A stretch of DNA of 64,000 bases from Oculina patagonica (lineage: Eukaryota), in the NCBI RefSeq assembly GCF_052425735.1, contig NC_135763.1, forward strand, positions 1,860,001 to 1,924,000. Direction: 5' to 3'. How positions within the stretch are numbered: position 1 is the first letter of the stretch; the number at the start of each line of letters is the position of its first letter. Of this stretch, positions 36,801 through 39,800 are shown piece after piece. Made by a program: the position numbers and the translations under genes. The notes beneath the pieces are model-generated. The model saw nothing but the letters and a program-made list of their open reading frames with translations, did no database searches and had not been told where the DNA came from.

Positions 36801-39800
36801 ATAACACAATGTTAAAATCGTTTTCACAGCTAGCCATCTATTATTTTCAGATGAGCATCCAGTTTTAAACGATTTAGTGTGTGGCAGAATTGCCCAGAAC
36901 TGTGACACATTTTGTGTTACTAATCAATCAATAAAAAAATATGACTCAGTCACATTAACAATGCTAACAAACCGACTGATCATGACAACTAGATTTGCCT
37001 TTGCATGGTAATGATCTATCGCAGATTTTGAAGCAATGAACATTTCGCCTTGAGCTTATACAGCTCTTTCACTTGCTTTTAAGCTATGAAGGGGAGTACA
37101 TCTGATGATCCAAAGAAAAACTTAGGACATCCAAGGTTTTAAATCTATTAATAATAATATTAACATAAGTTTAATTTTTTTATATAAAAGGTTTATACCT
37201 AAAACAAGGATTCTGTGAGTGGGGCCACTTCAGGTTCTGTAGTGCATTTCACAAGGGCTTTCCATTTCCAACTTTGGTATCAGTGGAATGAAAAATCTTC
37301 TATATATTTTTGACCACTTGAATGTATTCGGTATATTAAATTAGTTTGTACTTAAAGTATGTGAAAGTGAGACTTCACAGTGACAAGGTTCGTGTTTCAA
37401 AACTGTTTTGGCCACACAGCCTTTGGTAGCTTTAATTAATGTATTAAATGAGAAACAGTCACGAGACACGACCTAACCTGCATTTCATCACATTCATCAG
37501 GGCGGTCTTTGTGGACAGTCATTTGATATTTTGCATAGAGAGCACATGTCTGTTTGTATGTTGCTTTAAATTCTTCAGACTTCAAGTCCACTCTCACTAT
37601 TTTGACCTAGGAATTTAAACAACTAAGGGTGAAAATTCAGCTCGCAAAATAATGAGAACTGAAAGTTATTTCTTGCTTGTTCAATTGGTAAGGAAGTGAA
37701 CCCTACAGGTTTTAAAATGAATACACCTTTGAGCTTTTATTGGCTTAAAGATCCCCCGAAAATACACTGCACATATTCGAAGGCAACAGTTGTAGTGACG
37801 ATTTTACAATCTAATATTGAAGATGCCAATATCTTGCAATGCACTTGATGGAACAGAAGTGGCCCCCTCCCCACCTTGAACTTGTTACTAATGTTATAAT
37901 ACCCTTTTCTCAGTGCATTTTTCAGGGGGGTCTTTATGGATAGCTCTTTGGTATTTAAAGAACAGCGCTGCAGTCTGTGGGAAGGTTTGCATAAATTCCT
38001 CATTGTTTGGGTCTGATGGAATCAGCTTGATCTAGAATTGAAGCACATACATGTTTGTATCATTTATAAGCTGTGCAAATTTTTCGATCTTTACCAACTC
38101 GATTCTATGGATATTCCAATGAACTACAACTATAAAGCTTAATGGCACAATATATAGACATGAAATTAAACATTGCTCTGATCAACATAATTACTGGTAA
38201 CTTATACATGCGTGTTTGAGTAATGTATTCATTTAGTGAAATCACGCGGCAACTTGCCTAGTAAGACCACAACTACAATCTAAAAATGTAGTCGAATAGT
38301 CCATAGCAAATGATGCATCCAATAAAACTTCAGGTGGGTCTTAAAACTCAATGAGTCCAGGAGCAAAACATCTGCCTTTATTTTGACTGTACCATTGGCA
38401 CTTGGACAATTCATTTTGTCACCACTGTGGGGGCATTTCCCACCCCCACCCCATTTGGGTATGTTCAGGGGATGGCCCAGGGAAAAGGTACTGGAGAAAT
38501 AGACAACTACGATTTGTTCGAATCATAGCATAGGTCTGGAGTAATTTGTACGGGGTGGAATCTTTACCTGGAGATCGTGAGCAGGTGATTGGCTAGGTAG
38601 TCTATCAATCACAAAGTCTTCCAATGATTTCGTGATGGGGGCTTTGGACGTTTGGGAACTTGATTCTGAATCTGCCAACTAATGAATGTAAAAAACCCAA
38701 AACAATTAAATAACCTGAACATCATTTAGGTGTACACCATATTAAAATTGTGGCAAAAATGGGTTATCCATTGTTATTGCTGTTAATAACACATAGTTTG
38801 TACCCTTACTCTCTCTGCTTCAAAATGTCGGAGAAATGGACCGGACTCTGGTATTTGGTAATCAAAAATTCATGACTACATGGAGATACATTTTTAACAG
38901 TCATTCTACCGGTATTTTGGTTTGCAAGCATTAATTAAAAACTTTAAACAGATGTTTCAAAATAACCCAACTATTACATCAAAATTATGTGATTAATAGG
39001 CAGGAAGTCATACATTTATGATGTAGGGTAAATTTCTCTTAAGAATTTCAAGGTGGGATTTACATACATGCATGCTTTCCTGTGCCACAAGATTTTTTAA
39101 GATAACAAGGTTAATAATTACTGTATTATTGGCTAGGCTCCAAGGTACGTAATGCACATTGAGGGGTATGTTGTCGTGGCCCTACATGCATTTTGGGCCG
39201 ATTGAACTCTCAAATTATTGGCTGGTCTCAAAGTGATAGGCATGTAATACATTTATTTAAAGCAGTCAGGATGTGTAGGTTTGCCCCATGTGTGTAGAAG
39301 GCTACTTGGGTTGTATAAGGTAGCAGCTCTTGCAAGAGAACAAAAGCTTATGAAAGCTGTGGCACTACTGTGCTTTACCGTACCCAAATTCGCAAGTAGC
39401 CAATCAGAAGCGCGATCTACTGTCCTGATATCCTACGATATCAAGTCACTGACCTGATATGCCCCATATCACGGTCACTTTGAAGTAAAGTAGTGTTACT
39501 GTACGATGAATTGAAAAGAGGTTTACCAATAAAACAGAACTTCGTAACTTAATTTAAGCGATGTTTAGCGGTCGTAAAAAGAGAAAAACTTTCCCGCCAA
39601 AACTAAACTTGAGCGCGCTCGCCAATTGCGCGATGTTTGCAGATGAGTACTGAGACATTCCGACTGAAAAATGGAGTCGGTATTTCCAAATTTTTCGCTT
39701 AATTTTGATTTTGAAAATTTAGAGAATGAAACTCTAAACAAACGAGTGAAAAAAAGGCAGAAGAAGAACTTGGTAAAAGTGTTGAAGACCTAGTCAACAC

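What the first reader, a model, noticed from the sequence alone, without database searches (positions are those of the whole stretch)
37478..38031. ATE1 carries two paralogous 129-nt mutually exclusive exons, like mammalian 7A/7B, in an apparent cnidarian
Seen: two intact, equal-length, phase-0 exons between the ...HDLQ and FRRFL... exons. They are alignable (EEF..T..QT.AL..KYQ...HKD.P..C.E) but well diverged. Established: mammalian ATE1 has alternative 129-bp exons 7A/7B at this position. Inference: this N-degron isoform switch predates the cnidarian-bilaterian split or arose convergently. Both exons preserve frame and the intron between them is 296 nt, so neither NMD nor steric exclusion can enforce exclusivity.
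Basis: partly seen in the sequence, partly recalled or inferred. Interest (0 to 1): 0.8.

Follow-up and report, generated by a model that had tools for sequence, protein, structure and literature searches.

The report
Coral ATE1 alternative exon pair
The coral Oculina patagonica makes two versions of the arginyl-transferase ATE1 by using one or the other of two neighbouring look-alike exons, as vertebrates do, and the downstream coral exon resembles vertebrate exon 7b closely enough to suggest the switch is older than the split between corals and bilaterian animals.

Summary
On the minus strand, ATE1 has two intact 129-nt phase-0 exons: A at 38031-37903 and B at 37606-37478. They are 46% identical as peptides. 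Both align to residues 273-313 of human ATE1-2.

RNA contigs of one public run show exactly the four predicted GT..AG junctions (6>A, A>8, 6>B, B>8). No A>B or 6>8 junction appears.

The window is Oculina patagonica. RefSeq already lists the two equal-length isoforms, X1 with B and X2 with A.

The pair is intact in the genomes of Pocillopora, Stylophora, Porites and the octocoral Paramuricea. Acropora and Montipora show it in protein models only. Nematostella has a single exon.

In exon trees, anthozoan B groups with vertebrate 7b (support 99/94). Likelihood mapping favours A-with-a and B-with-b in 73% of quartets. However, AU tests do not reject an independent anthozoan duplication (p 0.07-0.23), and protostomes duplicated a different 54-aa unit.

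Published datings are "Bilateria" or "after Chordata", so a cnidarian pair extends them.

A conserved long-range RNA stem brackets exon B in Oculina, Pocillopora, Stylophora and Paramuricea. It has the same layout as human R2-R5 and is the likeliest means of exclusion.

The scan noted this stem separately (s1-286718). Moderate interest: a new member of a known kind.

The parts
38568..38678 (-). ATE1 exon upstream of the pair ('exon 6', 111 nt, ends ...HDLQ). Its donor at 38568 is used for both alternatives.
   Evidence: Sequence. X7 contigs join 38568 to 38031 and to 37606. The peptide is present in XP_078372427.1.
37903..38031 (-). Exon 7A: 129 nt, phase 0, 43 aa, with Lys at position 38 and a '...[12 protein letters not shown]' end. 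It is the upstream alternative.
   Evidence: Joints 38568>38031 and 37903>36696 in X7. Present in RefSeq isoform X2. dN/dS is 0.09-0.30 among corals.
37607..37902 (-). Intron between A and B: 296 nt, GT..AG.
   Evidence: Covered only by the DNA runs X22, X24 and (partly, to about 37690) X26, and not by the RNA contigs of X7.
37824..37892 (-). 5' arm ('dock') of a long-range RNA stem, 11-79 nt downstream of the exon A donor. The core GGGGCCACUUC is at 37866-37856.
   Evidence: the repeat finder pairs I6 and I11. Duplex of -55.9 kcal/mol against -36.1 +/- 2.8 for shuffles, z -7.0. The stem is in both the MFE and the centroid of the 713-nt fold, z -4.9. Homologous arms occur in Pocillopora and Stylophora, with a C-G to U-A compensatory change.
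37478..37606 (-). Exon 7B: 129 nt, phase 0, 43 aa, with 'V.V' at positions 4-6 and a '...LYAKYQM..HKD.PDEC.E.Q' tail. It is the downstream alternative and the 7b-like copy.
   Evidence: One X7 contig spans exon 6, B and exon 8. Present in RefSeq isoform X1. Groups with vertebrate 7b at 99/94 and 98/94.
37192..37259 (-). 3' arm of the long-range stem, 219-286 nt downstream of exon B. The core GAAGUGGCCCC is at 37231-37221.
36664..36696 (-). Exon 8: 33 nt, [11 protein letters not shown]. It is the common acceptor for both alternatives.
   Evidence: Joints 37903>36696 and 37478>36696.

Best explanation
These are two functional, alternatively chosen exons of the only detected ATE1 locus of the coral Oculina patagonica. 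Each mRNA carries A or B between exon 6 and exon 8, giving two 543-aa arginyl-tRNA-protein transferases that differ in 24 of 43 residues. This part is shown.

The pair sits at the position of vertebrate exons 7a/7b, with the same length, phase and order. It is shared by stony corals and octocorals.

The most likely history (inferred, about 60%) is one tandem duplication before cnidarians and bilaterians split. On this reading the downstream copy B is the counterpart of 7b and the upstream copy A the counterpart of 7a. Later events would be loss of the b copy in Nematostella (shown to have one exon) and, apparently, in amphioxus and Ciona (protein models only); partial homogenisation of the middle of coral A by B; and a separate duplication of a longer unit in protostomes.

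Exclusivity is most likely enforced by RNA structure (inferred, about 50%). An element just after the exon A donor pairs with an element 220-500 nt after exon B. Whenever exon A and its donor are kept, exon B is looped out and the A donor is brought next to exon 8. If exon 6 is spliced to B, the first arm is removed with the intron and B is joined to exon 8. This is the layout of the human R2-R5 pairing.

In the human enzyme many of the residues encoded by exon 7b lie on the homodimer interface. The switch therefore plausibly tunes oligomerisation rather than catalysis (inferred).
For: Exon anatomy is.

RNA evidence:
- Four junctions and no A>B or 6>8 joint in X7.
- RefSeq X1/X2 of this gene differ only in this exon.
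- 15 of 15 transcript-derived coral proteins carry exactly one exon.

Conservation:
- Intact A and B with AG/GT borders in Pocillopora, Porites, Stylophora and Paramuricea.
- Dendronephthya X3 carries A and Xenia carries B.
- dN/dS is below 1 for both exons.

Ancient origin:
- Anthozoan B plus vertebrate 7b form a clade at 99/94 and 98/94, with hemichordate b next to it.
- The ML topology of the four-group data is (A+a | B+b).
- Likelihood mapping gives 73% for that split against 19% and 8%.
- Every A/a copy has Lys at position 38 and every B/b copy has Asp or Glu.
- The order a-then-b is the same in both lineages.
- The C-terminal third of coral A is a-like: 56% identity to 7a against 37% to 7b.
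- Nematostella's single exon shares the SD.NN.EF and CTEK motifs with coral A and is 56% identical to vertebrate 7a.

RNA stem:
- z is -7.0 in Oculina, -3.6 in Pocillopora and -4.7 in Paramuricea against dinucleotide-preserving shuffles, and -4.0 in Stylophora against plain shuffles.
- The stem is in the MFE and the centroid fold.
- There is one compensatory C-G to U-A change between Oculina and the pocilloporids.
- Human R2-R5 loops out 7b and promotes 7a (PMC7797038).
- Exon 7b residues lie on the human dimer interface (PMC11283454).
Against: - Only 43 alignment columns are available. AU tests do not reject an independent anthozoan duplication: p 0.073 on 60 taxa, and 0.23 and 0.09 in the four-group tests.
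- In the large trees, scleractinian A sits beside the B/b clade (89/89, 96/86) and not with bilaterian a. A-with-a orthology rests on the end segments and on Nematostella.
- Protostomes duplicated a 54-aa unit and their b copies form a separate clade. Recurrent duplication of this exon is therefore real.
- RNA evidence for the window itself is assembled contigs of a single run. Contigs drop rare forms and give no ratios.
- RefSeq models of Acropora and Montipora include A+B and double-skipped forms.
- No stem was found in Porites. The Paramuricea stem has unrelated sequence and could be an independent origin or an inverted repeat.
- No experiment bears on the stem or on the protein-level difference.
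Confidence: 0.6

Rival explanations
1. Convergent origin. The anthozoan ancestor duplicated a single exon 7 on its own, independently of the deuterostome 7a/7b duplication. On this reading the likeness of B to 7b reflects retained ancestral residues plus similar selection on a dimer-interface segment.
For: - AU tests do not reject anthozoan A+B monophyly (p 0.073, 0.09, 0.23).
- Scleractinian A and B share Gln19, a small residue at position 21 and Leu-Phe at 23-24 in the middle of the exon, and A falls next to the B/b clade.
- Protostomes show that this exon was duplicated at least once more, as a 54-aa unit.
- Martinez-Gomez et al. [quoted passage not shown]
Against: - B groups with vertebrate 7b, excluding A, at 99/94 and 98/94.
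- The independent-duplication topology is 6.7-15.8 log-likelihood units worse.
- It gets 19% of quartets against 73%.
- The Lys versus Asp/Glu split at position 38, the a-like ends of A and the same exon order all fit common descent.
- Nematostella keeps an a-like exon while corals keep a b-like one, so both types exist within Anthozoa.
Confidence: 0.32
2. The two exons are not strictly exclusive. They behave as two independent cassette exons, with A+B and double-skipped mRNAs made at appreciable levels, and the apparent exclusivity is an artefact of contig assembly.
For: - Co-inclusion and double skipping keep the reading frame.
- RefSeq predicts A+B isoforms in Acropora and Montipora, and a double-skipped form in A. 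muricata.
- The GenBank model KAL9968644.1 of this gene includes both exons.
- The X7 contig carrying exon A breaks at the exon's 3' end, which may mean a second, minor continuation exists there.
Against: - No A>B or 6>8 joint appears in X7, and the B contig runs unbroken from exon 6 to exon 8.
- RefSeq lists only the two single-exon isoforms for Oculina, Stylophora and Ptychodera among the cluster members read.
- 0 of 15 transcript assemblies carry both exons.
- A strong stem that would sequester B is present.
Confidence: 0.1

Closest known systems
Mammalian/vertebrate ATE1 exons 7a/7b, with the regulatory RNA elements R1-R5 (Kalinina et al. 2021, PMC7797038)
   Same: - Same gene and same position: after ...H.L[EQ] and before F.RFL.
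- Same length (129 nt), same phase, tandem arrangement and a-then-b order.
- Single-exon isoforms.
- The downstream copy is 7b-like.
- A pairing between the intron after the first exon and the intron after the second exon loops out the second exon, as R2-R5 does.
   Different: - Coral introns are 0.3-1.9 kb, against a 30-kb span for R2-R5.
- No R1/R4-type near-identical boxes upstream of both exons, complementary to a third box, were found in Oculina.
- The arm sequences are unrelated to the vertebrate ones.
- Coral A is a mosaic, a-like at the ends and b-like in the middle.
- No tissue or functional data exist.
Protostome ATE1 tandem exon duplication (Drosophila Ate1 and C. elegans ate-1 in Martinez-Gomez et al. 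2022; here molluscs, Lingula, chelicerates, crustaceans and insects)
   Same: The same region of the protein is duplicated in tandem and annotated as alternative isoforms. The first copy has Lys at position 38 in most of the copies read and the second copy is acidic there.
   Different: The repeated unit is 54 aa, that is exon 7 plus the 11 residues that form a separate single exon 8 in corals and deuterostomes. The protostome b copies form their own clade away from 7b and coral B.
Ambulacrarian ATE1 pairs (Ptychodera flava X1/X2, Glandiceps talaboti; the echinoderms Acanthaster and Patiria show one b-like copy each, in a model named X2)
   Same: In the hemichordates, 43-aa units are followed by one exon 8, with equal-length isoforms. 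Their b copy groups with vertebrate 7b and coral B.
   Different: The two hemichordate copies are more alike than the coral pair. These are bilaterians, so they fall within the published 'Bilateria' dating.

Membership tests
ATE1 (arginyl-tRNA--protein transferase) | ATE_N (PF04376) and ATE_C (PF04377) domains encoded by the same gene | tested here: met
   Exon translations hit ATE_N (E 5.6e-9) and ATE_C (E 6.5e-14 and 3.8e-7), above the curated cut-offs. The full protein XP_078372427.1 contains the window's exon A/B peptides and flanking exon 6/8 peptides.
ATE1 exon 7a/7b-type mutually exclusive pair | Two adjacent homologous exons of equal length and phase at the exon 7 position | tested here: met
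   129 nt each, phase 0, 46% identical. Both align to human ATE1-2 residues 273-313.
ATE1 exon 7a/7b-type mutually exclusive pair | mRNAs contain one or the other, not both and not neither | tested here: met
   Four junctions and no A>B or 6>8 joint in X7 contigs. RefSeq X1/X2. 15 of 15 coral transcript assemblies carry one exon. Limits: this is one run of contigs, so rare forms cannot be excluded, and A+B models exist for Acropora and Montipora.
ATE1 exon 7a/7b-type mutually exclusive pair | Each exon is orthologous to 7a or 7b respectively (common descent) | tested here: inconclusive
   B with 7b at 99/94 and 98/94. The ML topology is A+a | B+b, with 73% of quartets. Independent duplication is not rejected (p-AU 0.07-0.23), and scleractinian A is not placed with bilaterian a in the large trees.
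MXE clusters regulated by competing or long-range RNA structures | Conserved complementary intronic elements that bracket an alternative exon | tested here: met
   The first 80 nt of intron A-B pair with the intron after B. z is -7.0, -3.6, -4.7 and -4.0 in Oculina, Pocillopora, Paramuricea and Stylophora (the last against plain shuffles). There is one compensatory pair change. No stem was found in Porites.
MXE clusters regulated by competing or long-range RNA structures | Disrupting and restoring the pairing changes exon choice | not testable with these tools
   This needs minigene or genome-editing experiments.
MXE by U2/U12 incompatibility, steric hindrance or NMD | A U12-type splice site, an intron under about 80 nt, or a frameshift on double inclusion | tested here: not met
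   All donors are GT and all acceptors AG, none with a U12-type donor motif. The intron is 296 nt. The exons are 129 nt, which is 3 x 43.

The most novel reading that the evidence does not exclude
[quoted passage not shown] It has been kept for more than 600 million years in corals, octocorals, ambulacrarians and vertebrates. [quoted passage not shown]
Probability: 0.3. Interest if true: 0.7.

Novelty: new member of a known kind. Interest (0 to 1): 0.5.

Why it matters
The origin of the ATE1 7a/7b switch is disputed in print. [quoted passage not shown] Another dates the event to 'Bilateria' and treats the fly and worm events as convergent (PMC9741552). A third says non-bilaterian taxa are needed to decide between convergent and divergent evolution of such clusters (PMC5740500).

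A coral and octocoral pair whose downstream exon groups with 7b supplies that non-bilaterian data point. It contradicts the first statement and probably pushes the event back before Bilateria.

It also offers compact loci for testing the idea. The introns are 0.3-1.9 kb against 30 kb in human, so a loop-out RNA stem can be tested as the means of exclusivity. The positions that tell a-type from b-type copies apart, such as Lys versus Asp/Glu at position 38, fall on the human homodimer interface. That gives a concrete hypothesis for what the two isoforms do.

Tried and rejected
- **Region-restricted protein search.** A search with the Nematostella exon found only 2 candidates, so it was uninformative.
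- **Missing genomic loci.** Look-ups for Acropora and Montipora failed because the products were not on record. No Complexa locus other than Porites could be checked for the stem.
- **P0124.** It turned out to be the old Nematostella assembly and not another anemone.
- **Missing taxa.** No medusozoan, sponge, placozoan or ctenophore ATE1 could be identified among the proteins retrieved. The age beyond Anthozoa+Bilateria is therefore untested.
- **Outgroup rooting.** Non-metazoan sequences align over only about 25 columns and gave a basal polytomy.
- **Whole-intron duplex folding.** It was uninformative, with z about 0.
- **Upstream competing selector.** A selector in the intron before exon A that would pair with the same dock scored z -1.3 to -1.6, and the sites are not homologous between species. 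Not supported.
- **Exon A against the 3' splice site of B.** This complementarity (repeat finder I2) is neither significant nor conserved.
- **Other exclusion mechanisms.** NMD, steric hindrance and U12 incompatibility are excluded by the sequence itself.
- **Paralogue.** No second ATE_C match was found in the genome, so mis-assigned exons from a paralogue are unlikely.
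Full report
**1. What is in the sequence**

Read on the minus strand, the window holds an ATE1 gene from about 43880 down to about 33000.
- Exon translations hit Pfam ATE_N and ATE_C above the curated cut-offs.
- In the 529-Mb genome, ATE_C matches lie only inside this window, so this is the only detected ATE1 locus.

Between the exon that ends ...HDLQ (donor at 38568) and the 33-nt exon [11 protein letters not shown] (acceptor at 36696) lie two open 129-nt segments.
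- A is at 38031-37903 and B is at 37606-37478.
- Each is preceded by AG and followed by GT, in phase 0.
- A 296-nt GT..AG intron separates them.

The peptides are 19/41 identical, with a pairwise E of 2e-15. Each alone finds human ATE1 isoform 2 (8tzv_A, residues 273-313) among all PDB sequences, at E 5e-7 and 8e-8.

**2. Whose gene it is, and what is already annotated**

The B peptide is identical to that of XP_078372427.1, 'arginyl-tRNA--protein transferase 1-like isoform X1 [Oculina patagonica]'. Its 543-aa sequence contains the window's exon A/B peptides and flanking exon 6/8 peptides.
- XP_078372428.1 (isoform X2, also 543 aa) differs only at residues 300-342 and carries the A peptide.
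- The submitter's model KAL9968644.1 strings A and B together.

The window is therefore the stony coral O. patagonica. RefSeq already lists the two single-exon isoforms, although I found no paper that discusses them.

**3. RNA evidence**

Of the four runs laid, three are DNA: X22 and X24 cover the introns throughout, and X26 covers the part downstream of about 37690. Run X7 (organism A, study P1) has no intron coverage and shows four joints with CT..AC ends on the + strand, which is GT..AG on the gene's strand:
- 38568>38031
- 37903>36696
- 38568>37606 (printed as 37604/38566, cut +2)
- 37478>36696

One 188-nt contig runs from exon 6 through all of B into exon 8. Two contigs join exon 6 to A and A to exon 8. 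No 37903>37606 (A+B) or 38568>36696 (double skip) joint is listed.

Contigs show presence, not absence or level, so rare co-inclusion is not excluded. The contig with exon A breaks at the exon's 3' end, which could reflect a minor alternative continuation.

Indirect support comes from other corals.
- A JGI coral transcript set holds A-only (P0275) and B-only (P0007, P0274) proteins.
- Logan transcript assemblies clustering with Stylophora and Acropora give A-only or B-only proteins.
- In total 15 transcript-derived proteins carry exactly one of the two exons and none carries both.
- Equal-length isoform pairs are annotated for Stylophora (X1 with A, X2 with B), A. millepora, A. palmata, Montipora and the hemichordate Ptychodera.

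Against strict exclusivity, RefSeq also predicts A+B forms in Acropora and Montipora, and one double-skipped form in A. muricata.

**4. Distribution**

I scanned genomic loci fetched for other species with a profile of exon 7 peptides.

| Species | Result |
|---|---|
| Pocillopora verrucosa | Intact A and B with AG/GT borders, 345-nt intron |
| Stylophora pistillata | Intact A and B, 368-nt intron |
| Porites harrisoni | Intact A and B, 863-nt intron |
| Paramuricea clavata (octocoral) | Intact A and B, 904-nt intron |
| Nematostella vectensis (two assemblies) | One exon only |

Dendronephthya isoform X3 carries an A-type exon and Xenia a B-type exon. Both exons are under purifying selection among corals: dN/dS is 0.09-0.30 for A and 0.30-0.87 for B. 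The variants in the runs laid are synonymous in A and Leu>Val in B.

Predicted proteins that include both copies reveal tandem pairs well beyond vertebrates:
- a hemichordate (Glandiceps)
- molluscs
- Lingula
- chelicerates
- crustaceans
- insects

Ptychodera instead shows the pair as separate equal-length isoforms, and the echinoderms Acanthaster and Patiria showed a single b-like copy each, in models named isoform X2.

There is a structural split. In vertebrates, hemichordates and anthozoans the unit is 43 aa, followed by one exon 8. In all protostomes examined the unit is 54 aa and includes its own copy of the F.RFL..SPL. segment.

**5. One origin or several**

I ran an ML tree of 60 exon peptides over 43 columns, so resolution is limited.
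- All eight anthozoan B exons, the octocoral's included, fall in a clade with vertebrate 7b (99/94).
- Hemichordate b lies next to that clade (94/72).
- Vertebrate 7a groups with mollusc a (83/96).
- Protostome b forms a separate clade (97/86).
- Nematostella, amphioxus and Ciona single exons group together on the a side (85/81).
- Cnidarian A falls beside the B/b clade (89/89).

With nine non-metazoan outgroups, which align over only about 25 columns, the a-type and single exons form a basal polytomy. Scleractinian A plus B/b is a clade at 96/86 and B+7b stays at 98/94.

Because B is closer to 7b than to A, the face-value reading is that the A/B split predates the cnidarian-bilaterian split. 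The statistics are as follows.
- Holding anthozoan A+B together costs 15.8 lnL units, p-AU 0.073.
- In four-group data sets the ML tree has the split (A+a | B+b).
- The independent-duplication split is 6.7-11.0 units worse, with p-AU 0.23 (vertebrates only) and 0.09 (with hemichordates).
- The cross pairing is the worst, at p 0.05 and 0.04.
- Likelihood mapping over 5040 quartets gives 73% for A+a | B+b (47% in the fully resolved corner), 19% (6.5%) for A+B | a+b, and 8% (1.3%) for the cross.

Common descent is therefore favoured but convergence is not rejected.

Character evidence points the same way.
- Position 38 is Lys in every A/a copy examined and Asp or Glu in every B/b copy.
- The a-type copy is upstream in both lineages.
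- Coral A is a mosaic. Its C-terminal third is 56% identical to 7a against 37% to 7b. Its middle is 47% identical to 7b against 25% to 7a. Partial gene conversion by the neighbouring B exon would explain this, but that is my inference.
- Nematostella's only exon shares the motifs SD.NN.EF and CTEK with coral A, yet is 56% identical to vertebrate 7a and 40% to 7b. This links A to the a lineage and implies loss of b in that anemone.

The distinct 54-aa unit and the separate clade of protostome b argue that protostomes duplicated the exon again on their own. That also shows convergence at this exon is possible.

**6. What is published**

[quoted passage not shown] - Martinez-Gomez et al. list ATE1 among events dated 'Bilateria' (Table S1).
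[quoted passage not shown] Cnidarians are not mentioned there.
- Hatje et al. wrote that non-bilaterian taxa are needed to decide between convergent and divergent evolution of shared clusters (PMC5740500).

The coral pair bears directly on that question. The hemichordate, mollusc and coral b-type exons contradict the first statement.

**7. How exclusivity may work**

Three mechanisms are excluded by the sequence.
- Double inclusion or double skipping keeps the frame, so NMD cannot police it.
- The 296-nt intron is too long for steric hindrance.
- All splice sites are ordinary GT-AG.

The strongest local complementarity in the region lies between the start of intron A-B and the intron after B (repeat finder pairs I6 and I11).

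| Species | Duplex (kcal/mol) | Shuffles or z | Note |
|---|---|---|---|
| Oculina | -55.9 | -36.1 +/- 2.8, z -7.0 | Arms at 37892-37824 and about 37259-37192 |
| Pocillopora | -45.1 | z -3.6 | 17 perfect pairs |
| Stylophora | -39.4 | z -4.0 (plain shuffles) | |
| Paramuricea | -44.0 | z -4.7 | 22 perfect pairs, unrelated sequence |
| Porites | none | z -0.3 | |

- The 5' arm is alignable among the three robust corals.
- The pair next to the CACUUC core is C-G in Oculina and U-A in both pocilloporids, which is a compensatory change.
- The stem closes both the minimum-energy and the centroid fold of the 713-nt interval, z -4.9.

Its layout, with one arm in the intron between the two exons and the other after the second exon, is that of human R2-R5. 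Disrupting R2-R5 abolishes 7a and favours 7b.

My model, which is inferred, has two parts.
- If exon A and its donor are retained, the stem loops out B and hands the A donor to exon 8.
- If exon 6 is spliced to B, the first arm leaves with the intron.

I found no good evidence for an upstream selector competing for the same dock.

**8. What the switch may change in the protein**

In the human ATE1-2 cryo-EM structure, many homodimer-interface residues (S278-E280, K285, E305, D308-E309, G311-E314) lie in exon 7b (PMC11283454). D308-E309 and G311-E314 correspond to exon positions 37-38 and 40-43, the stretch where a-type and b-type copies differ most and where coral A and B differ. A change in oligomerisation is therefore a reasonable hypothesis, but it is untested.

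**9. Verdict**

The observation and the 'mutually exclusive exons like 7a/7b' reading are confirmed. The exon pair is already in RefSeq, so the anatomy is not new.

Three things are new relative to the papers I could read:
- The pair exists outside Bilateria and is shared by stony corals and octocorals.
- Its downstream member groups with 7b.
- It is bracketed by a conserved loop-out stem.

The scan recorded the stem as a separate note on this stretch (s1-286718).

The N run at 42401-42530 interrupts an upstream ATE1 exon and was left untouched.

Noticed in passing
window about 43900-44500; L003:1-895, L006:1-836, L007:1-922, L008:1-298: A zf-Tim10_DDP (TIMM13-like) gene lies head-to-head upstream of ATE1 in Nematostella, Porites and Stylophora as well. 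The divergent ATE1/TIMM gene pair is therefore an old anthozoan arrangement.
   Followed up: partly
L005 about 5235-5255 and L008 about 6250-6270 (20-35 nt upstream of exon B): Pocillopora and Stylophora carry a second copy of the 3'-arm motif (G/A)AAGTGACCA just upstream of exon B. The dock after exon A could therefore pair either right before or about 400 nt after exon B. Oculina lacks this copy.
   Followed up: partly
P0287, P0291, P0297, P0305 (RefSeq models of Acropora and Montipora): RefSeq predicts A+B co-included isoforms in Acropora and Montipora, and a double-skipped isoform in A. muricata. Porites, the only complex coral whose locus I could read, lacks the loop-out stem. A link between missing stem and leaky exclusivity is possible but untested.
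   Followed up: no
P0162, P0196, P0199, P0227, P0283, P0342 and others: In molluscs, Lingula, chelicerates, crustaceans and insects the tandem unit is 54 aa (exon 7 plus its own F.RFL..SPL. segment), not 43 aa. Their second copies form a clade apart from 7b. This is probably a separate duplication.
   Followed up: partly
window 42401-42530: A run of 130 N interrupts the exon that encodes part of ATE_N.
   Followed up: no
window 37540; 37951; 37993: All four runs laid read C instead of G at 37540, which is Leu>Val at codon 23 of exon B. The exon A differences at 37951 and 37993 are synonymous.
   Followed up: partly
exon B against exon A in Oculina, Pocillopora, Stylophora and Porites: Synonymous divergence of exon B is lower than that of exon A in every coral pair (for example 0.38 against 0.57 and 0.48 against 0.81). 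Such a pattern would fit extra constraint on the RNA of exon B, though this was not tested.
   Followed up: no
P0270 (KAL9968644.1): The submitter's GenBank model of this gene reads through both alternative exons, giving 555 aa. This form is not seen in the RNA contigs.
   Followed up: yes
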